A DNA stretch of 64,000 nucleotides from Guillardia theta CCMP2712 (lineage: Eukaryota > Protista > Cryptophyta): assembly GCF_000315625.1 (NCBI RefSeq), contig NW_005434663.1, positions 310,001 to 374,000 on the forward strand, read 5' to 3'. A model generated the notes under the pieces. The model ran no database searches, had not been told where the DNA came from, and was given only the letters and a program-made list of their open reading frames with translations. A program made the translations under genes and the position numbers. Below, one piece after another: positions 37,690-47,770 of this stretch (its first letter is position 1; each line of letters begins with the position of its first letter).

Positions 37690-40600
37690 TTATGTCACAT
37701 GATGGACGCGTGTGTCTGCAATCGCACCAGCCGTCTCAGCAACCCGCCTCCACCTCTACTCCTCTCCTCTCTCTCTTCTGCTATCCTCTCCTTCTTTCCC
37801 CTTCTGCTCTGCTTCTCGTCTCCCCTCTTGCTATCGTCACCTCCTCTCCTCTCCCCACCGCACCGCTCCTCTCCTCCCTCCCCTCCTCTACTCCTTTTCT
37901 TCTTGTCACCTTGCGCAAGTTGACGCTGCCGCCCTGCGGATTATCCACGACCACCTTAAGTGCGTCATCTGCTATGAGCACGAAGCAGAGGAGGGGAGGA
38001 GAGAGGAGAGGAGGGGAGGGGAGGGAACAGGTGAGAAAGAAAGAGGAGGAGACGGGTGAGAAGGGGAAGTGGAGGGGAGGGGAGGGGAGGTAGGGGGGCA
38101 GGGGAGGAGAGGAGAAGGAGGAGAGAGGAGAGGAGGATAGAAAGGAGAAGCAATAAGTAACAATGACAAGTTTCTTACAAACTCTGAGTTCGAGACATTT
38201 CTTGTGCGCGAGGAAGTCTTCAAACTTGAATGTTTGCCAGCGGGCAAGACGCGATCAATCTCTGACAACCAGGCGTTCCTGAACATGATCTGAGTTGTTG
38301 ATACCACAAGGGAGTAGGAGTAGGAGTAGGAGGATGAGAATAAGCAAGAGTAGGAGTAGGAATAGGAGGAGGAAGAGTAGGAGTATGAGGAGGAGGAGGA
38401 GGAGGAGGAGGAGGAGGAGGAGGAGGAGGAGGAGGAGTAGGAGGAGGAGTAGGAGGAGGAGTAGGAGGAGTAGGATTAAGAGCCGATGATGATGATTGAA
38501 GGGATGTTGATGGCAATTTGCTGAGCATTGCGGATGATTGTAGCATGAAAAGATGAGGCAAAGACAGAAGTTCACATGTCTATGGGTTCGTCCTTCGGAT
38601 CAGAATGAGTTGGTCGTATCGAATTCATGAAGTTGTCTTCTTGCGGATCAGAATGAGTTCGTCGTATCGAATTCATGAAGTTGTCTTCTTGCCGCTGAAT
38701 CGCAATCATGATCGATGTTGAATCGTTTCTTCTCATCTTCTTACCTCATTCTGTGCTGCAGGGTGAATTTGGAAGAGATTGTGAAAACCCTGGAAAATGA
38801 CCATCAAGACCTTCAGCATTAAGATTGCTATCATATCAGCATAACATAGATCCTCTCCTCTTCATCTCTGTCTTATCAGGATGGCATGAAGCAGCAACAT
38901 ATTGCTGCTCACGTTGGTGCTCGAACGTCGTCCTTCCGGCTTGTTGAGTTTTCGTCTCTCGGTGTCAACTTCTCTCGGCATGGTTCTCCTCGTCTTCTTT
39001 GCTTCCTCCTTTGTATGTTTCGACGACAGATTGTCGATCTTGTTTTCAAGCGCTTCCAATCTGCAATCATCGAGGCAACTTCATTACTATTGCCTTTGAT
39101 ATGTTCCCCTCCTCCCTTCCTCCCCTAATCCTCCTCCTCGAATTGCAATTTTCATCACCATCGTTCTCAAACCGAATAGACTCGATCAACAACAATCAGT
39201 ACATGTAACCATCCTCTTCATGATCAGGATCAGGATCAGGATCAGGATCAGGATCAGGATCAGGATCAGGATCAGGATCAGGATCAGGATCATATAGCTG
39301 TGAAAGCAGGAGAGAGCAACCTTTCCATGATAGCAGTATTATGCTTGTTCACAGCAGCCATGAATTGCATCATCATTTCCTGCATGCCGTCAGGTCAGCA
39401 TAGAGTTTCGATCGACTTTGAAACCTTGGATTCATCTCCTCCCCTTGACGTCTTTGAGTCTTCCACGTGCGATATGCTCGAGCTTTGCTGCTGCTCCTCT
39501 TCCCTCGTCCTCTTGCTGACGTCAACCCCAAGCGTTCTCTTCGTGATGTCTCCCACCGCGAGCTTCAGCGCGAACATGACGAAGCCGAAGTGCTGGTCGT
39601 CCCTCATGACAGCTGGGAGAGAGTTGGCCAGGTTTCTCTCGGCGAAGCTCAACATCTGGATCCGCAAAGTCCTCTCGAACGCGTCTTTGTCCAGCTCGCC
39701 ATCAGCATCGCACAGAGAGTGCTGGAGGGTGATGGCGTTGTACTCGTCCTGGGAGAAATTGATCCTGGGCTTGAACTCCATCTTCTTAAGCCCCTCATAG
39801 AGCTCCTGCCAGCTCAGCGCGCCGGATCGGTCGACGTCGAGGCGGTCGAAGAGGTCGGAGCAGCGTTTCTTCATCTCCTCATCGGACTTGACGTTGATGA
39901 AGGTCTGAAGGAGCGGGTCGATGGATGTTGTTGTCCCCTCCCCCCTTTCTCGCTCCAGCTTCTCCCGCTCGTTCTTGTCCTTCTCCCTCCTTGTCGCCGT
40001 GGTGAAGTTGTCTAGGAGGACGGCGATGACGACGGGGAGAAGGGTAAAGGAGACGATGATGAGGAAGGAGACGAAGAACAGAGCCGATCCTGGAGTCATC
40101 GAGCCATCCGCGTTGAAGAGATCGCGGGAGATGCTTGCCCAGTCATCGAACGTTGACACCTGACAACTGATTTACATCTCCCCTCCTCCTCTCTACCTCT
40201 ATCCTGCCTTCTTTCCTCTCCCTCCGCCTGCCTGCCTGCCTGCATGTCTCCTTCCTCCTTCCTTACTCTCTCTCTGCCTTTCTCACTCGTTCCCCAGCAT
40301 CTCTTGATCACTCACTTGAAACATGGTGAAGATTCCCTGCGAAGAACAATTAAAGGCGAGGCTCCCCTAAGACGCGAGACGATCGCAGGACCTGGGCGAA
40401 GGTTTTGAAGTGATTCTCGTCTCGCTTGCGGAAGAAGCTCACTCCCAGCACCTTGCAAGAGTTTCAGCGGAGGGACAGGGCAGTCAGAGAGACAACTGAC
40501 CGCATAGATGGCCATGACGAGAAAGACGATCAGCATCGCGTTGAGAACAGGCCTGACGTGTCAAAGTCAATCTTGACCATGGCTGACCCTCCTGTGTTGT

Positions 40601-42978
40601 CGTTACAAGATGGAGGCCGTGAGAGCATTGATCAACATCCTTAAAGATTTCAGCCTGAAGAATCAAATCATCAGCCTCACCTCCTCCTCCTCCCCTTTGC
40701 CTTCTATTCCTCCTCCTCCTCCTCCTCTTCGCTGTCCATTCATCCTCCTTTTTCTCCTCCTCCTCCTCCTCCTCCTTGCTTTCTCCATTTTCTTCTCCTT
40801 CTCTTCCTCGCCTATCGTCCTCTCTTGTCCCCTCTCCTGCTCTCCCTCTCCTGCTCTCCCCCATCTTCACTCACCTCGCAAAGATCCTCATCACTCGAAA
40901 CGCTCGGAGCAATCGAAGAGTCTTGATGAAGGGCAAACTCACTGCGCCTAGTCGTCACAAGGCAGCCTGCAACGTGACGACCATGAAGACCTGGTCCGAG
41001 CGAGACGATGGTGACTGAGACTACAATAAAGTCGAACACGTTCCAACTGGAAACAGGAATGTGAGTCACTTCGACCCTCCTGCTTGGTTCTCCTACTTGT
41101 CTCTCCAGAATTCAAAAAACCAATGGGCACACATATTGACCAGCAGCTCGAACGCAAACACGAGCGTGAAACCCTGTTCACACCCGCCAGTCAGAAAGTT
41201 TTGCATAAGTCATGATGACAGTCATATCACCACGTCGAGCATCTCAAACATGTGCGATGTACTCGATCCCTCCTCCGGCGTCACCTTCACATTCATTTGC
41301 ATCTGCAATGTAGCGCGCACCTTCCTCTCTTTACCTGCAGCTCTGCTGCTGTAGCACAGAAGTTCAATGCAATGAGAAGAGCGAAGAATGTTTGTGTTAT
41401 GTTTGAATCGTAGACTCTTGATAGGTTTTTCTACATTACCATGCAATAGTCATCATCTACCAGGATGCAGAAACCTTCACTGCTTACCCTTAGAGTCGTC
41501 CAGAAGTTGTTTCTCTTCCACGTTTTGGTTGCACTATACAAGCAGGTTGAGAAGTCTACTAACTCCACATGTCAAATCTTACACAGTAATCTGATGCTCC
41601 ATGGTTGAGATCCACTCCTCGACAAACTGCAGAAGAAAAGTCCTTCAGAAGCATCGGCAAGGCAGCATCATTGGCGAGAGGGTTGCAATAATGAGAAGAA
41701 TGAAGAGAATAGTACATAAATCACACAGTACATCACCTTGATCTTGTAATCCTCCGACAACTTATCAAGACTGAAGATTCGAAATGAATATGTTCTTCCT
41801 GTAGTATGCTTCACTTCCCTTCCACCACATAAGGTATAAACAAGTGCCTGAGTTGTACCCATCAGCAATCGTCCTGACATGCAGAATCTCCTGATTTTCC
41901 AAGCTCATTGGCATAAATCAAGTAGAGCTAACAGTTGCGAACCTTGCTCTCCATCAGGATTGCTGGCAGAATCGATCTCTGAAACTCTTCGAACTGAATG
42001 CTTCCTGCAAACAAACATTTCAACGCTTCGTCTGGCAGATTCGAACTTCCTGACCGTCCTTGTTCATGTCAGCTTCCTGTCAAGCAAGAATCTCAGAATT
42101 TTCAGAAGACAGCCTGTAGATTGTCTGACCTCGTAAATGGCTGCGATCCTCCTGGAACTGATCCCAAACCTCGACATCGCTAGGTTCAACTTCGGGAATG
42201 GCCATAGGTCAAGAAAGAGGCAGCGTGAAGAATCCTCCACCTCTTGCAACGACAGACATCCATTCCCGTCGGTATCGATCTCGTTGAAAAGCGCTTGGAT
42301 GTCATGATGACCGTTTTGCACAACCTCGATCTTCGAGTTCTTGTCAGCTCCGAGAGACAAGGTAACCCCAACCTCACCTCATGTAGGGGGATGTAATCCA
42401 ACATCACATCGTCGCCTTCTAGAGCGATAGCAAGACGATCTTTGAGCAACACAATCTGTTCAACGATTTCAGAAAAACAAAGAGAGCGAGTCAGGTCCAA
42501 ACCTTTCGTCTTTGCTCTCCAGCACCATAATAAAAGGTGTCTGGTGGATTCATTGATAGGCGTCACACATAAGGCAGCTGTTTGATCTGTTCACCTGATT
42601 TGACGATTTGAAACTGTGAGATCAGAGGATTTGTATTGTCAATCTTGGAAATTCCCAGGCTATTTCACGCAAGGTGAGATTGGCACTACGGGGTTGGTCG
42701 CAATGCTCACCCGACTTGGGCTTTGAGCATCTTCCGTGCACCATTCGCTGCTGTGCTTGCCACGAAAGCCATACTTGTGTAGGAATATAGCTTCCTCCTC
42801 CCCTAGAGGCGAATGACAAAAAGACGAAAGATCAAATCACTCGCCAAGGCGACAAAATAGAGACATGACTGATGCTCTCACTTCGACTCTATCCTACAAA
42901 CACCCTTCAGTCTTCTCTCACTCTCTTCGTATCTTCTTCTGCTCCCTCTTCACTCTCTCTCCTCTCTTCTGCCGCCAT
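37690..42978 (-). CDS. Single-domain (6TM) voltage-gated cation channel, BacNav/CatSper/EukCat-like, with N-terminal PH-like + EF-hand region and C-terminal EF-hand/coiled coil
   Basis: S2 FTLVFAFELLVN; S3 WNVFDFIVV; S4 exon 40875-40947 IKTLRLLRAFRVMRIFAR; S5 PVLNAMLIVFLVMAIYA; pore GIFTMFQ|VSTFDDWASISR; S6 FFVSFLIIVSFTLLPVVIAVLLDNF; EF loops DTDGNGCLSLQE and DVDRSGALSWQE. Ends approximate. Confidence 0.9.
38596..38692. repeat. 48-bp direct repeat, two copies
   Basis: cggatcagaatgagtt[g/c]gtcgtatcgaattcatgaagttgtcttcttg at 38596 and 38644. Confidence 0.9.
39222..39292. repeat. (GATCAG)n microsatellite, ~12 copies, intronic
   Basis: Directly visible. Confidence 0.95.
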
Positions 42979-43627: not shown

Positions 43628-46600
43628 ATGAGCATGGAAGAGATTTCTCGTGTTGTTGATAGCATTGAGCGGCAAGACATCAACGTTGAAATGTTGTGTC
43701 TCGATGGAAGGTCAAAGTTTGTGATGTTAAACACAAGCGCAGAAGACCGCAGGCATCCATCGCAATTCACTGAGCATGAGAGGGGAACACGACAATCAAA
43801 TCAGAGATGGCTCAGTCAAGGTCAAGGTCAGGATACGGCCATGGTAGATATGATGACCAAGCTTGTTCGCCTTCAGAAGTTTGTGAAAAGGAAACCAGTC
43901 ATCTCAGCATTCGAAGCATGGATCGACAAGACTCACGAGCTGATACGCGTGCGAGAATTATGCAATAGAATAGTTCATCGTATGAAAGGCTCGTCAACTG
44001 CGAGATACTTCATGGGTTGGATGTACCTGGTCCAAGAGCGGATTAGAATCAGGGAGTGGTATGCAGGACATGAGGAGAAGATCAGGAGCAAGAGACAATC
44101 TTCTCTGGGGTTCGACTCCTTTTGTCGTTGGCGGCTAGGCTGTGCAGTCAGCAATCCTTGGGGTCTTGTTTTCAGCTGGGAGCTTGACACGTCTGAGGTA
44201 GACTTCGTTGTGACAGCAATACAGCGCAGGAAGGCATTTGGTTCCCCATATGAGGAGTGTGCAGTTGGACTAGACTTTCCTGCCTTGGAAGGAATGACAG
44301 TGAGATTGAGTTCTCAGGGTCGCTCTGCGCTCAATGGCATGAACTTTCGAACTCGAGGAGAGGAGGGGCCTGGGGTTGTTCTGCAAGCCAACGAGGGGGA
44401 GGTAGTCGTAGTGCAGTGGATAAACAGCGGGAGGATCAAGAGCTACTGCACAGGACACTGCTTTCAATTCTGGTTGACACCTGCCACCGCAAGCATGAGT
44501 GAAGGGACAGGAAATCTTCATCTTGTCTTAAAGTTTCCAAGGTCGACTCCATGGTCGATGGGACAGTACGAAGATGAGGATGGTTTCCTTCATTCGCCGA
44601 TAGGCTGCTCACCAGAGAAGGCAAGAATCTTGCAATACGTGAAGGCGAGATTAATCAGAGATCACTACTTGAGACAGAAAGCGTCGAGTGTGCTGCAGAG
44701 CTTCTGGGTTGGAAGAATGTGCCGGCAACGCTACATCCTGATGGCCAGACAAATATGCGTGCTGCAGAGGATAGCTGTGTCTTGTGCGACAAGGAGCATC
44801 GTTCAACTCCCTCTCCTGTTGGAAGAGCGAGACAAGATCAGGAACGAGTCGGCAAGCACGCTGCAGGCAAGCCTGCGAGCAGAGATGGCTTCCAGGAATG
44901 TTGTGAAGTTGAAGGCTGTTGTGAACTCGGTGGTGAGAAGAAGGAGCTTCGTCGAAAGGCAAACGAGCGCAAAATCGTTGACAAGAGCTTGCTCAAGAGC
45001 GCTGGTTCAAATCCTTACGCGGAGGATGATAGTCGTCGAGCGGTCCGTTGAGATCATAGGTATCAGTGCGTTGAGAACAATCAGCCGCAGGAGACATGCG
45101 GAGACGATTGAAAGTTCTGCTCTACTCGTGTCCTTGGCCCGGGCAAGACAGTCAAAGAGTGACTACCAGCGGACTCGGTCTGCAGTATCCTCCCTCCAAG
45201 CAATGGTACGACGGGGTAGCGCAAGCAGGAGGTACTGCGATGGTTGGGTGGAGGCTGCAGTGAAGGGGATGGTCGAGGCTGTCGCATCCTCGTGTGCTAC
45301 CGTCCTCCAGGCTGCGGTCAGGAGGCGACTCGCCATCGACAGGAAGGAGAAGCTGCGGATTTCTGTGAAATTTCTCTCCGTCTGTTTCGTCCGGACGAAA
45401 TTCCGTCTGCAATGGCTGACCATCGTCCGTGCTGCCGTCCGCCTGCAGGCCAGCTGCAACTTCGCGCTGAACAGGATTGGAGAGGACGGGATTCGTTTCC
45501 TGAGCAGATTCTTGTGGAGGCGAGTGAGGAGGACGAGGCTCCTTTGCCGGCTGCAGGCAGCGCTAAGGATGGGTGTAGCTTCGACTGAGCACAGGGCTCG
45601 ACGAGCGGGGACCTGTGTGCTACAGGCGAAGCTGAGGAGGACGGTGAACAGGCTCGACTTCTCGATGCAGGTGAGAGGAAGGCATGAGCTTGCTGCCAAG
45701 GTCTGGCCGGTAGAGCGACTGCAAGCGTGCGCGAGGAGGAGGATAAGTCCTCCGCTGCTGCTCAAGTGGTCGTTCATGAACCCCCACGCTGTGATGAGGG
45801 TCCTTCAAGCAGCTGCGAGGAGAACAGAGAGGAGGAGCAGGTACGCGCTACGTTTTGCTGCCTCGATCACTCTCCAGGCCTGCCTGCGGTGTCGGCTGAT
45901 CCGCCTTCACTTCCTCTCTGCTCGGCTGTGGTGTGAGAGGAGGAAGCAGCCGTTCGACCGGCTCTTCTCCCGAGTCGTCGGGCATTCGGTAGGGAAGGAG
46001 CAGCTGCGGGTCCAGGCAGGGAAGCAGCGGGGGATGTGGATGACGGAAGTCCCGCAAATCCGGGAGAGAGCTCGAAGCCTGCTGGGGTCGGAGGCGGTCG
46101 GGGAGACTCTGATGCAGACGGTGGAGAGGAGCGGGAGGGTGGAGGAGGCGAAAGTCTCCTGCCTCCTTCCCGCCATCCCACACGCTTCGCTGCCCCACCA
46201 GGTCCGAGTCGTCAAGAGGAGCTTGATGAAGCAGCAGCTCCCCTTCCTCCACGTGCCCAGGGACAGCACCATCGTGAGGAGGCTGCGGGAGCAGGAGGCA
46301 GAGGTCGACCGCTGCTCGCACCGAGAACGCGAGCAAGGGAAGATGGCGAGAGCGCTGCTGGAGGGCCAGGAGTCGCGAGTTCTACACTGCGAGCTGAGCA
46401 TGGCGGAAAGGCTGCAGGAGAGGATCCAGAGCTCGATGCTGGAGGAGGAGGTAGCGAAGCTGGAAAGGACCAGAGCTCTCAGCCAGACCGTCACCTTCAT
46501 GCCGCAAGGGCCGAGGGGCAACTCTCCCTGCTTCTCCCATCCTCGTCGCAAGATCAGTCTTCCTGCACCCGCAGAGGGGAAGCGTGTGCGTCGTTGGGAG

Positions 46601-46712
46601 AGGCAGGAGGGAGGAGAGGAAACGGATGGGCGGCGGGGAGACAAGCACTCTCGTGAAGGTCAAGAACCTCTGGATGAGGAAAACAGGCTCCTTCAGCAGA
46701 AGGAAGTGCATG

Positions 46713-46755
<43 letters not shown>

Positions 46756-46756
46756 A

Positions 46757-46821
<65 letters not shown>

Positions 46822-47770
46822 AGTACGGCCTTCATCAGCAGCTATCCGTTACAATGCCCTGAAGAGGAGGAGGCTGCAGATCCAGCGGGAGGCGGAAGAG
46901 GCGAAGGAGAGGAGGCTGAAATGGCTGCTGGCGGAGCTGGAGCAGGAGCAGGGGGGGCAGCAGCTGACGGTGAAGAGCGGGCAGGTGATGCGCTGCCTTG
47001 CAGAAGCAGAGATCGTAGAGGAGAGGATGCGAACGATGGTGCGAGGAGGAGCCAACGTCACGCTCCTGCTGAGGCTGTCGGAGCTGGTGCAGGAGAAGAG
47101 GGCCGAGGCAATGCGGCTGAGCGCAGCGATCAAGATCCAGCGATGGTTCCACAGCACCGTGAAGGGCTGGAGGGAGAAGAAGAGGAGGAGGGAGGAGGAG
47201 GTCAAGACCGCAAAGAGTAGGACGACGGTTATGAGGACGCAGCGATGGCTGGAGCAGCACGACGGGGAGGAGGCGAGCAGGGGCGCTTTGTCGCTGGTGA
47301 ATATCAGGAGGAGCAAGATGAATCACGCGAGGATAACGCGCAACGCCCCGACGGTGAGGAAGAGGGCGGCAGCGAAGCTGCAGGCGGCCGTGAGGATGGA
47401 GGCGAGGAGGAGCGAGTTCATGGAGTCCTTCTCCTCCCTCACCTTCCGCCGCCTCCTCTCCTCCATCGTCACCCTCCAGTCCGCCTGCCGCCGCCTGCTC
47501 CTCCAGCAAGAGGCCCGCAGAATCGCGCCAGCCATCATGATCCTGCAAGGAAAAGTCCGGTGCTTCCTCGAGCGAGACGCATACCACGAGAGCGTGAGGA
47601 GGAGGATAGCAGAGGAGACGCTGCAGGTCAAGGCGAAGGCGGCAAGGCTGCTGCAGGGAGGGCTGAGGAGGCAGCTGATGCGGCTGCGGAAGGAGCAGGA
47701 GAAGGTTCGGTTTGAGTCCGCCATGAGGATCGGAGATCGGATCATCACGTATGAAAGCATCTTCCGGTGA
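43628..47770 (+). CDS. Large IQ-motif-repeat (calmodulin/centrin-binding, ASPM/Sfi1-like) protein with a Mib/HERC2-like SH3-fold domain; major exon
   Basis: 1380-aa uninterrupted ORF with many LQAxxR motifs (LQAAVRRR, LQACARRR, IQRWF). GPGVV..EVVVVQWINSGRIKSYCTG resembles Mib/HERC2. Probably has further small exons (GTGAG donor at ~47767). Confidence 0.75.
46715..46821 (+). repeat. (GAGCAG)n coding repeat, poly-EQ tract
   Basis: Directly visible inside the IQ ORF. Confidence 0.9.

What the first reader, a model, noticed from the sequence alone, without database searches (positions are those of the whole stretch)
37690..42978. Single-domain voltage-gated channel with Ca2+-type filter TFDDWAS plus split PH and EF-hand modules
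Seen: one 6TM unit with an RxxRxxRxxR S4 and pore FQ-VSTFDDWAS; the P-helix GIFTMFQ is a 21-nt micro-exon (40316-40336). Established: Na-selective BacNavs have TLESW, whereas TLDDW is the filter of CatSper1 and engineered CavAb; eukaryotic single-domain EukCat channels are known in algae. Also seen: a PH-like domain (IVLLKDRLAIA..DYIPLHE ... GRTYSFRI..EEWIST) interrupted by an EF-hand, a second EF-hand after S6, and Pro in place of the conserved S6 Asn (LLPVVIAV). Inference: a homotetrameric Ca channel regulated by voltage, phosphoinositides and Ca feedback.
Basis: partly seen in the sequence, partly recalled or inferred. Interest (0 to 1): 0.7.

Follow-up and report, generated by a model that had tools for sequence, protein, structure and literature searches.

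The report
PH-fused one-repeat voltage-gated calcium-type channel
This is an intact 22-exon gene of the alga Guillardia theta for a one-repeat voltage-gated cation channel; it has a calcium-type (Asp-Asp) pore, a PH domain split by a calcium-sensor pair in front and a second calcium sensor behind, a domain layout I found in no paper.

Summary
On the minus strand, 42772 to 39395, lies a frame-consistent 22-exon gene of 640 codons in Guillardia theta CCMP2712. It encodes one S1-S6 voltage-gated channel repeat. The parts are:
- an S4 with Lys/Arg at every third position;
- the pore sequence GIFTMFQ|VSTFDDWAS, with GIFTMFQ on a 21-nt micro-exon at exactly 40336-40316;
- Pro at the S6 Asn position;
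- a C-terminal EF-hand domain.

That these parts form one gene rests on a tandem paralogue with the same exon order and on complete transcript-derived ORFs from other cryptophytes. No RNA data could be read for this locus.

The closest solved single-repeat channel is NaVEh (EhEUKCATB1) of Emiliania huxleyi. G. theta holds at least 30 paralogous loci. Most have TGDxW filters; only this gene and its tandem copy have TFDDWAS. Calcium preference is plausible from NaChBac and EhEUKCATB1 mutant data but untested. Phosphoinositide control and homotetramer assembly are inferences. The N-terminus also looks like the NaVEh inactivation ball.

This scan had already noted the PH-fused family at other loci of this genome. 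The gene is a new variant of a known kind.

The parts
42716..42772 (-). Exon 1: start codon and N-terminus MAFVASTAANGARKMLKAQ (small/hydrophobic run followed by basic residues; ball-like).
   Evidence: Conserved in the tandem paralogue (MAFVASIAASGRSRRQK). Similar N-termini occur in homologues. The donor is uncertain: 57 nt here versus 62 nt in the paralogue.
42595..42613 (-). Exon 2, a 19-nt micro-exon (FQIVKS), putative PH beta1.
   Evidence: AG/GT flanks and consistent phase. The paralogue has a 17-nt equivalent (LILKT). This is the least certain join in the model.
42503..42540 (-). Exon 3 (TFYYGAGEQRRK), PH beta1/beta2 loop with basic RRK.
   Evidence: Nearly identical in the paralogue (FYYGAGEQVRK), with the same acceptor phase.
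42378..42455 (-). Exon 4, PH beta2-beta4 (IVLLKDRLAIALEGDDVMLDYIPLHE).
   Evidence: Aligns to the family motif D.IPL.EI.
42241..42330 (-). Exon 5: PH beta5 (IEVV), then the EF-hand 1 helix and loop DTDGNGCLSLQE.
   Evidence: Pfam EF-hand_6 E=2.6e-5. Canonical 12-residue loop.
42130..42189 (-). Exon 6: EF-hand 1 exit helix and EF-hand 2 entry helix (LNLAMSRFGISSRRIAAIYE).
   Evidence: Conserved in the paralogue (LTVALSKYGFRANKITAIFE). The preceding 51-nt intron keeps the frame.
42055..42076 (-). Exon 7, a 22-nt micro-exon (EADMNKD + first base of Gly): first half of the EF-hand 2 loop.
   Evidence: The paralogue has the same 22-nt exon (DADVNLD). AG/GT flanks.
41943..42004 (-). Exon 8: second half of the EF-hand 2 loop and its exit helix (SIQFEEFQRSILPAILMESK).
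   Evidence: With exon 7 it completes the loop DMNKDGSIQFEE. Conserved in the paralogue.
41848..41890 (-). Exon 9: PH beta6 and loop (EILHVRTIADGYNS). It is followed by a GC-AG intron.
   Evidence: Matches the family motif F.I.T...G.N.GR. The donor is GC here and GT in the paralogue.
41737..41798 (-). Exon 10: PH beta7 (RTYSFRI) and a linker.
   Evidence: Matches the family motif GR.Y..R.
41583..41626 (-). Exon 11: PH C-terminal helix with the signature Trp (FVEEWISTMEHQIT).
   Evidence: Aligns to the nearly invariant Trp of the family.
41488..41533 (-). Exon 12: basic linker before S1 (ATKTWKRNNFWTTLR).
   Evidence: The paralogue has an equivalent 46-nt exon (AKKKWKKLNRINKLQ).
41335..41430 (-). 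Exon 13: pre-S1 and S1.
   Evidence: tblastn colinear matches to P0073, P0066 and P0086.
41231..41284 (-). Exon 14: S1-S2 loop (VTPEEGSS...). An alternative in-frame acceptor lies at 41302.
   Evidence: Matches the family motif P..GS. The intron is 50 nt with this acceptor and 32 nt with the other.
41097..41173 (-). Exon 15: S2 with the conserved Phe/Glu (FAFELLVN).
   Evidence: Invariant F and E of the family. tblastn.
40991..41046 (-). Exon 16: S3 with the conserved Asp (WNVFDF).
   Evidence: Pfam Ion_trans partial hit. Invariant Asp of the family.
40875..40947 (-). Exon 17: S4 voltage sensor (KTLRLLRAFRVMRIFA+R).
   Evidence: Lys/Arg at every third position, read directly. The family Arg columns are nearly invariant.
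40607..40654 (-). Exon 18: S4-S5 linker (LKSLRMLINALTASI).
   Evidence: tblastn to several homologues.
40501..40552 (-). Exon 19: S5 (PVLNAMLIVFLVMAIYA).
   Evidence: tblastn.
40392..40451 (-). Exon 20: end of S5 and turret (VLGVSFFRKRDENHFKTFAQ).
   Evidence: 50-55% identical to P0006 and P0009. Identical protein in the related strain.
40316..40336 (-). Exon 21, a 21-nt micro-exon: pore helix GIFTMFQ.
   Evidence: AG/GTGAGT flanks. The two differences in the related strain are both synonymous. The paralogue has a 21-nt equivalent, SFFTMFQ.
39395..40159 (-). Exon 22: selectivity filter STFDDWAS, S6 with Pro (LLPVVIAVLLDNF), the LDPLL-type motif, the C-terminal EF-hand pair (DVDRSGALSWQE canonical; the second loop degenerate), tail and TGA stop.
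   Evidence: Pfam Ion_trans 28.1 bits plus EF-hand. AF2 model pLDDT 82 with an EF-hand-like C-terminal domain. 17 synonymous versus 7 non-synonymous codon differences to the related strain.

Best explanation
This is a complete, probably functional gene of Guillardia theta CCMP2712. It encodes a subunit of about 640 residues of a PH-domain-fused, single-repeat voltage-gated cation channel.

Shown here:
- One S1-S6 repeat with a charged S4 and the S2/S3 counter-charges.
- A pore loop TFDDWAS.
- A PH domain in front of S1 whose beta5/beta6 loop holds two canonical EF-hands.
- An EF-hand domain directly after S6.
- Membership of a large cryptophyte gene family whose nearest solved relative is the coccolithophore channel NaVEh/EhEUKCATB1.
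- Placement in a subfamily marked by an S6 Pro and a hydrophobic residue at filter position 2.

Inferred:
- Four subunits, either identical or mixed with the tandem paralogue, form a depolarisation-activated pore.
- The eight Asp carboxylates of the pore make it prefer Ca2+.
- The three canonical EF loops per subunit let cytosolic Ca2+ feed back on gating.
- The N-terminal segment (small and hydrophobic residues, then Arg/Lys) plugs the open gate as in NaVEh (N-type inactivation).
- The PH domain holds this cytoplasmic assembly at the membrane, possibly through acidic lipids.
For: Gene model:
- 22 exons, 20 GT-AG introns and 1 GC-AG intron, consistent phases, 640 codons.

Organism:
- GUITHDRAFT_98923 (P0073) matches the window's own assembly (G000) at 100% identity.

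One gene:
- The tandem paralogue shares every exon in order, including the 21- and 22-nt micro-exons.
- Transcript-derived ORFs of Hanusia phi and Proteomonas sulcata carry PH + Ion_trans + EF-hand.

PH domain:
- Pfam PF00169 scores above its cutoff in P0021 (32.9 bits) and P0092 (29.2 bits).
- An AF2 model of paralogue P0073 residues 30-262 (pLDDT 80) has five strands, then a helical insert, then two strands and a helix. All top Foldseek hits are PH domains, with TAPP1 at TM 0.80.
- The window exons align to both halves.

Channel kinship:
- The family profile scores 247 bits against NaVEh (7x5v), versus 167-192 bits for NaChBac, NavAb and NavMs.

Filter:
- Only this gene and its tandem copy have DD among about 30 paralogues.
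- NaChBac LEDWAS has PCa/PNa 35 and LDDWAD 133 (PMC2229573).
- EhEUKCATB1 E305D becomes Ca/Ba permeable.

Purifying selection:
- 17 synonymous versus 7 non-synonymous codon differences in exon 22.
- Both changes in the micro-exon are synonymous.

Ball idea:
- The NaVEh N-helix is described in PMC9114117.
- The N-termini of this family are listed.
Against:
- The exon 1/exon 2 join is uncertain.
- One intron has a GC donor.
- The filter lacks the third Asp of CavAb/CaChBac (Ser at position 7). Diatom EukCatA with TLDAWAD is non-selective.
- Pfam finds no PH domain in the window's single exons, so the PH call rests on homologues and per-exon alignment.
- The PH lipid-binding signature is only loosely kept (K ...
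- The NaVEh N-helix sequence itself was not compared residue by residue.
- The S6 Pro replaces an Asn that is conserved across NaV and CaV channels (my own knowledge), so gating could be unusual or the channel could be silent on its own.
Confidence: 0.72

Rival explanations
1. The channel is a non-selective Na+/Ca2+ (or monovalent-preferring) voltage-gated cation channel, like diatom EukCatA, rather than a Ca2+-selective one.
For: - It has only two of the three acidic filter positions of CaChBac/CavAb, with Ser at position 7.
- OsEUKCATA1 with TLDAWAD conducts both Na+ and Ca2+.
- NaChBac LEDWAS is described as Ca2+- and Na+-permeant.
Against: - Asp at both filter positions 3 and 4 gives eight carboxylates per tetramer.
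- Calcium preference rose with each added Asp in NaChBac.
- A single E-to-D change already made EhEUKCATB1 Ca/Ba permeable.
Confidence: 0.35
2. The subunit works only as part of a heterotetramer with paralogues, for example the tandem copy 174 kb away, as CatSper subunits do. The filter ring would then not be a uniform DD ring.
For: - At least 30 paralogous loci in the genome.
- A tandem paralogue of the same subfamily with the same exon layout.
Against: - NaVEh and the BacNavs are homotetramers.
- The tandem copy has the same TFDDWAS filter, so a mixed channel of these two would keep the DD ring.
Confidence: 0.3
3. The PH domain is not a phosphoinositide sensor. It would instead be a structural or protein-binding platform, for example part of the chain that positions the N-terminal ball or docks the EF-hand modules.
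For: - The window copy has Gln where the family has the beta2 Trp, and a very short beta1/beta2 loop.
- The PH loops of this family tolerate large inserts at two different sites.
- Most PH domains lack specific lipid binding (my own knowledge).
Against: - A Lys in beta1 and RRK at the start of beta2 resemble the K-Xn-(K/R)-X-R signature.
- The top structural matches of the paralogue model include lipid-binding PH domains such as TAPP1, AKT and BTK. Fold similarity alone does not show binding.
Confidence: 0.5
4. The locus is a decaying or silent gene copy.
For: - GC instead of GT at one donor.
- No RNA data obtained.
- The tandem paralogue has GA at another donor.
Against: - All 22 exons stay in frame with no stop.
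- Synonymous changes outnumber non-synonymous ones 17 to 7 against a 95.5%-identical strain, and the micro-exon and its splice sites are kept.
- GC-AG is the commonest non-canonical intron class (my own knowledge).
Confidence: 0.07

Closest known systems
NaVEh / EhEUKCATB1 of Emiliania huxleyi (EukCatB; PDB 7X5V; PMC9114117; bioRxiv 10.1101/2020.04.29.068528)
   Same: - Single S1-S6 repeat from a red-plastid alga.
[quoted passage not shown]
- An N-terminus of small and hydrophobic residues followed by basic residues.
- Best solved single-repeat match of the family profile (247 bits).
   Different: - NaVEh has the filter TGESWSE and is Na+-selective; this gene has TFDDWAS.
- NaVEh has no PH domain and no N-terminal EF-hand pair.
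- This gene has Pro at the S6 Asn position.
- Only the last exon of this gene was scored directly against NaVEh, and it scored weakly (24 bits).
CaChBac (TLDDWAD) and CavAb (TLDDWSD), engineered Ca2+-selective bacterial channels (PMC2229573; PMC8677417)
   Same: Single-repeat channel with Asp-Asp at filter positions 3 and 4, before the Trp.
   Different: - Those are laboratory mutants of NaChBac and NavAb with a third Asp at position 7. This is a natural eukaryotic gene with Ser there and Phe instead of Leu at position 2.
- Those channels have no PH or EF-hand domains.
Four-repeat CaV channels, especially CaV3 repeat IV (STGDNW)
   Same: - Best raw PDB sequence matches of the pore/S6 exon (E=1.5e-14).
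- An EF-hand-like domain follows the last S6 in CaV and NaV channels.
   Different: - Those have four fused repeats with an asymmetric EEEE/EEDD ring; this gene has one repeat.
- The best single repeat scores about 115 bits against the family profile, versus 247 bits for NaVEh.
Split PH domains (PLC-gamma, syntrophin, ROCK II)
   Same: A PH fold interrupted by another folded module. The ROCK II split PH and PLC-gamma1 appear among the Foldseek hits.
   Different: - The insert here is an EF-hand pair in the beta5/beta6 loop.
- PLC-gamma and syntrophin are split in the beta3/beta4 loop (my own knowledge).
- None of these proteins is part of an ion channel.
Other PH-fused single-repeat channels of G. 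theta (e.g. GUITHDRAFT_98923 = P0073) noted by this scan at other loci
   Same: The same overall layout of PH + 6TM + EF-hand. P0073 also has an EF pair in the beta5/beta6 loop.
   Different: - P0073 has the filter SDGW, Gln in S6, and an intronless gene.
- This gene has the DD filter, Pro in S6 and 21 introns with three micro-exons.

Membership tests
Voltage-gated ion channel superfamily, single Ion_trans repeat (PF00520) | Profile match to Ion_trans above the curated cutoff. | tested here: met
   The last exon alone scores 28.1 bits against a cutoff of 25. Full-length homologues score 99-136 bits.
Voltage-gated ion channel superfamily, single Ion_trans repeat (PF00520) | S4 with basic residues at every third position, plus acidic counter-charges in S2 and S3. 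| tested here: met
   S4 is K..R..R..R..R in exon 17. Glu is present in S2 (FELL) and Asp in S3 (FDF). These columns are invariant or nearly invariant in alignment A1.
Voltage-gated ion channel superfamily, single Ion_trans repeat (PF00520) | Only one pore repeat in the gene. | tested here: met
   Own-genome searches find a single pore match in the window. The upstream neighbour is on the other strand. Homologous complete ORFs have one repeat.
EukCatB (Helliwell et al. 2019/2020) | Placement inside the EukCatB clade in a tree with the reference EukCatA/B/C, CatSper and BacNav sequences. | not testable with these tools
   The reference sequences and protein-ID tables are not held. As a proxy, the family profile scores NaVEh/EhEUKCATB1 above all BacNavs.
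EukCatB (Helliwell et al. 2019/2020) | Occurrence in haptophytes, cryptophytes or pelagophytes, with optional C-terminal EF-hands. | tested here: met
   The genome is G. theta CCMP2712. A C-terminal EF-hand domain is present.
EukCatB (Helliwell et al. 2019/2020) | Na+-type filter TGESWSE of the characterised coccolithophore members. | tested here: not met
   The filter is TFDDWAS. The paralogues mostly have TGDxW.
PH domain (PF00169) | Seven-stranded beta sandwich capped by a C-terminal helix with a conserved Trp. | tested here: inconclusive
   Met for homologues: Pfam is above its cutoff in P0021 and P0092, and the AF2 model of P0073 hits only PH domains. For the window itself the exons align to strands 2-7 and to the Trp helix. 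However, single exons give no Pfam hit, and the joined protein was not built.
PH domain (PF00169) | Phosphoinositide-binding signature K-Xn-(K/R)-X-R in beta1/beta2. | tested here: inconclusive
   By sequence the window has K (exon 2) and RRK (exon 3). The position is judged by eye, because the short exons misaligned.
EF-hand | Canonical 12-residue loop (D-x-[DN]-x-[DNS]-G-x-[ILV]-x-x-x-E) between two helices. | tested here: met
   There are three canonical loops: DTDGNGCLSLQE, DMNKDGSIQFEE and DVDRSGALSWQE. Pfam E-values are 2.6e-5 to 2.8e-5, with scores just under the cutoff for isolated exons. The fourth loop, after S6, lacks the ligands at positions 1 and 12.
CavAb/CaChBac-type Ca2+-selective filter | Acidic residues at filter positions 3, 4 and 7 (T-L-D-D-W-x-D). 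| tested here: not met
   Positions 3 and 4 are Asp, but position 7 is Ser. The relative P0004 has TFDDWGD, with all three.
CatSper | Sperm or flagellar heterotetramer of four distinct subunits, forming a clade separate from the EukCats. | not tested
No CatSper chain appeared among the 60 best PDB matches of the family profile.

The most novel reading that the evidence does not exclude
This would be a natural eukaryotic, single-repeat, truly Ca2+-selective voltage-gated channel combining four control devices in one 640-residue subunit: the voltage sensor, three Ca2+-binding EF loops, a membrane-lipid-reading PH domain, and an N-terminal ball for fast inactivation. It would be a minimal all-in-one excitability module and a compact structural model for CaV selectivity and Ca2+ feedback.
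Probability: 0.2. Interest if true: 0.8.

Novelty: new variant of a known kind. Interest (0 to 1): 0.6.

Why it matters
Single-repeat voltage-gated channels of algae (EukCats) are the nearest living models for how four-repeat NaV and CaV channels arose. Only a few have been studied.

A PH domain fused to a voltage-gated channel appears in no EukCat or NaVEh paper I could search. It would link membrane lipids or cytoplasmic partners directly to a voltage sensor.

This copy adds two features. The first is a natural Asp-Asp filter of the kind previously made only by mutating bacterial channels. The second is Ca2+ sensors on both sides of the membrane core. If the channel is Ca2+-selective, it would be a small homomeric eukaryotic CaV suited to structure work and to dissecting Ca2+-dependent gating.

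The expansion to 30 or more paralogues with varied filters suggests that cryptophytes, which are motile and phototactic, have a rich electrical signalling repertoire.

Tried and rejected
No splice junction is confirmed by reads.
- The 97%-identical database protein P0001 comes from a genomic Logan contig that is colinear with the intron, not from a cDNA.
- The word search with the last exon found only 3 proteins because of its length window.
- Supplementary ID tables of the EukCat papers are not held, so no tree with reference EukCatA/B/C sequences was built.
- Pfam on single exons gave no PH hit.
- Foldseek of the last-exon model gave only weak EF-hand matches (E about 0.01).
- One listing of cluster members timed out.
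- MAFFT fragment alignment misplaced the shortest exons, E2, E3, E6 and E7.
- The CatSper1 TLDDW claim was not verified.
- I first read exon 12 in the wrong frame (CNQNVEE...). I rejected that reading because the paralogue and the homologues support ATKTWKRNNFW..., and the GT donor falls one base later than I had first placed it.
The spliced model was only checked for frame consistency, exon by exon. Folds were made on the last exon by reference and on a database paralogue.

Full report
**What is there.** The window has about 52% G+C and its coding potential is broken into many short pieces, as in a eukaryote. The whole assembly (G000) is 87.1 Mb in 669 contigs, and the window is contig C11:310001-374000. 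The protein GUITHDRAFT_98923 of Guillardia theta CCMP2712 (P0073, EKX55140.1) matches that assembly at 100% identity over 901 residues. The organism is therefore this cryptophyte, as earlier notes of the scan also say.

**Gene model.** I read the minus strand and compared it with a paralogue 174 kb away on the same contig (L011).
- This gave a 22-exon model from the ATG at 42772 to the TGA at 39397-39395.
- A script that checks each exon, its flanking dinucleotides and its phase finds 20 GT-AG introns and one GC-AG intron. All phases are consistent, no exon contains a stop, and the total is 640 codons.
- Seventeen of the 21 introns are 43-57 nt long.
- Three exons are micro-exons of 19, 22 and 21 nt.
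- The least certain joins are exon 1 to exon 2 (57+19 nt here, 62+17 nt in the paralogue) and the acceptor of exon 14 (41284, or in frame at 41302).
Searches used single exons by reference.

**The channel core.**
- Exons 13-22 encode S1-S6.
- S2 has the Phe/Glu pair (FAFELL) and S3 has the Asp (NVFDF).
- S4 reads KTLRLLRAFRVMRIFAR, with Lys/Arg at every third position.
- The pore helix GIFTMFQ is followed by the filter STFDDWAS.
- S6 reads LLPVVIAVLLDNF.
- The last exon alone passes the Pfam Ion_trans cutoff (28.1 bits, cutoff 25).
- HMMER against 1.84 billion representative proteins finds 1034 relatives, 317 of them below 1e-10.
- Only one pore repeat lies in the window. The next gene upstream is on the other strand (43628-47770). 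The gene is therefore single-repeat.

**One gene or several.**
- The paralogue has the same exons in the same order: the N-terminus, both PH halves, the EF pair including its 22-nt micro-exon, S1-S6 including its 21-nt micro-exon, and the tail.
- Many full-length database relatives carry the same layout in a single ORF.
- Among them are transcriptome-derived proteins of the cryptophytes Hanusia phi (P0019, P0066, P0068, P0069) and Proteomonas sulcata (P0086, marked as a complete ORF).
- This is strong indirect evidence.

**PH domain.**
- Pfam PH (PF00169) is above its cutoff in homologues P0021 (32.9 bits, whole domain) and P0092 (29.2 bits), and is sub-threshold in others.
- The family consensus has the usual G.L.K ... 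W..R...LT ... D.IPL.EI..V ... F.I.T...G.N.GR.Y..R ... E...W pattern.
- An AlphaFold model of the G. theta paralogue P0073 (residues 30-262, pLDDT 80) shows five strands, a helical insert, two more strands and a long helix.
- All top Foldseek hits of that model are PH domains: TAPP1 (TM 0.80), AKT3, evectin-2, BTK and the ROCK II split PH.
- Added as separate fragments, window exons 4, 9, 10 and 11 align to strands 2-4, strand 6 with the GYNS loop, strand 7, and the Trp helix.
- The insert sits between strand 5 (IEVV, the start of exon 5) and strand 6. This loop ranges from about 12 to more than 100 residues across the family.
- In this gene the loop holds two canonical EF-hands whose spacing resembles that of calmodulin (my own knowledge).
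- P0100 carries an EF pair in a different PH loop (beta3/beta4), and P0126 carries one ahead of the PH domain. EF-hands therefore appear to have been acquired repeatedly in this family.

**C-terminal domain.**
- After S6 come a charged helix, the family motif (I/L)DPLL, a canonical EF loop (DVDRSGALSWQE) and a second, degenerate loop.
- The AlphaFold model of the last exon (pLDDT 82; 87-96 over this domain) folds as an EF-hand pair followed by long helices.
- Its Foldseek matches are all EF-hand proteins but weak (E about 0.01).

**Relatives and family structure.**
- A profile of 23 full-length relatives scores the Emiliania huxleyi channel NaVEh (7x5v/8j7h/8j7m) at 247 bits.
- NaChBac, NavAb and NavMs score 167-192 bits, and the best single repeat of any CaV or NaV scores about 115 bits.
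- NaVEh has the filter 303-TGESWSE-309. EhEUKCATB1 has the same TGESWSE filter with the same Glu305 numbering, and the NaVEh paper cites the EhEUKCATB1 study. I therefore take NaVEh and EhEUKCATB1 to be the same protein.
- EukCatB is the class reported for cryptophytes.
- I could not build a tree with the published reference set, so clade membership stays a proxy result.
- G. theta has at least 30 paralogous loci (31 matches at E<=1e-20 with P0073; 51 matches with the last exon).
- Their filters are mostly TGD[SGAN]W with Asn or Gln in S6.
- The window gene belongs to a subfamily with a hydrophobic residue at filter position 2 and Pro in S6.
- In a tree of the pore plus C-terminal region, the S6-Pro rows lie on one side of a branch (support 89/78). 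The window groups with its tandem paralogue (100/97), then with P0004 (TFDDWGD, 94/79), then with P0006 (99/95).
- Only the window gene and the tandem copy have TFDDWAS in this genome.

**Is it under selection?**
- A Logan contig from a related strain (95.5% identical, genomic) covers exons 20-22.
- Exon 20 encodes the same protein in both.
- The micro-exon has two changes, both synonymous, and its AG and GTGAGT flanks are kept.
- Exon 22 has 17 synonymous and 7 mostly conservative non-synonymous codon differences.
- A 1-nt indel 22 nt before the stop alters only the tail.
- This pattern argues for a working gene.

**How it probably works.**
- By analogy with NaVEh and the BacNavs, four subunits form a depolarisation-activated pore.
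- With Asp at filter positions 3 and 4, the ring has eight carboxylates.
- In NaChBac, LEDWAS gave PCa/PNa 35 and LDDWAD gave 133, against 0.15 for wild type.
- CaChBac and CavAb are TLDDWAD and TLDDWSD.
- Changing the single Glu of EhEUKCATB1 to Asp let Ca2+ and Ba2+ through.
- A preference for Ca2+ is therefore likely. The missing third Asp and the non-selective diatom TLDAWAD channel keep a non-selective pore in play.
- Three canonical EF loops per subunit make Ca2+ feedback on gating likely. EhEUKCATB1, which has C-terminal EF-hands, needed external Ca2+ to conduct.
- NaVEh inactivates by an N-terminal helix whose first two turns are small and hydrophobic, followed by an Arg cluster.
- This gene starts MAFVASTAANGARKMLK. 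The paralogue starts MAFVASIAASGRSRRQK. About half of the complete relatives start in the same style, for example MAAVVSAAVRRM and MAAAAQAGNRRRR.
- I therefore propose N-type inactivation, with the PH-EF module as part of the chain. This is inference only.
- Lipid binding by the PH domain is possible, given a Lys in strand 1 and RRK at the start of strand 2, but it is untested.
- The S6 Pro is a marker of the subfamily. Its effect on gating is unknown.

**Comparison and novelty.**
- Single-repeat algal channels with C-terminal EF-hands are known (EukCatB/NaVEh).
- None of the EukCat or NaVEh papers I read mentions a PH domain, and a full-text search for the combination found nothing.
- The ESM Atlas does hold a 219-member eukaryotic cluster with Ion_trans in all members and PH in 12%. 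The proteins therefore exist in databases without having been described.
- Two earlier follow-ups of this scan reported the same PH-fused family at other loci of this genome and also found it in no paper. My results agree with theirs.
- Specific to this locus are the natural Asp-Asp filter, the EF pair inside the PH domain, the S6 Pro subfamily, the ball-like N-terminus, and an intron-rich structure with three micro-exons. By contrast, the paralogue P0073 is a single uninterrupted ORF.
- I class it as a new variant of a known kind.

Noticed in passing
L011 (G000:C11:172500-182499), minus strand, about 175.2-179.6 kb of contig C11: The tandem paralogue has the same exon layout, the same TFDDWAS filter and the same S6 Pro, and shares the 21-nt and 22-nt micro-exons. 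Its donor equivalent to window exon 11 reads GA instead of GT. This could be a non-canonical intron, an assembly error or a damaged copy. A metagenome protein (P0002) is almost identical to its last exon.
   Followed up: partly
window 41846-41847 (minus strand donor after exon 9): This is a GC-AG intron. The paralogue has GT at the same phase-1 position inside the Gly codon of the GYNSG|RTY motif.
   Followed up: partly
L014 (G000:C1:75955-78657): The paralogue GUITHDRAFT_98923 is one uninterrupted ORF, whereas the window gene has 21 introns. Intron content therefore differs greatly within one gene family.
   Followed up: no
Proteins P0100, P0126, P0073 (alignment A2): EF-hand pairs sit at three different places relative to the PH domain in different family members: in the beta3/beta4 loop, in the beta5/beta6 loop, and N-terminal to the domain. 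This suggests repeated independent insertions.
   Followed up: partly
window 43628-47770, plus strand: A 1380-residue uninterrupted ORF lies divergent from the channel gene. It is Arg-, Leu- and Ala-rich, contains an (EQ)n run, and matches no Pfam family at E<=0.01.
   Followed up: partly
window 38258-38600, 39199-39290 and 40655-40874: Simple repeats: a CT/CTC-type low-complexity tract, a (GAT)n-type microsatellite just 3' of the stop codon, and a GGA/GAG-rich tract filling the 220-nt intron 17.
   Followed up: no
Cluster of P0126: One member of this eukaryote-type PH-channel cluster is deposited as 'MAG: ion transporter, partial [Promethearchaeia archaeon]'. It is probably a eukaryotic contig binned into an archaeal genome.
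   Followed up: no
L009 (Logan SRR23967302 contig), equivalent to window 39236-40454: A related strain or species is 95.5% identical at the DNA level. It has a 1-nt indel 22 nt before the stop, which changes only the C-terminal tail of the protein.
   Followed up: yes
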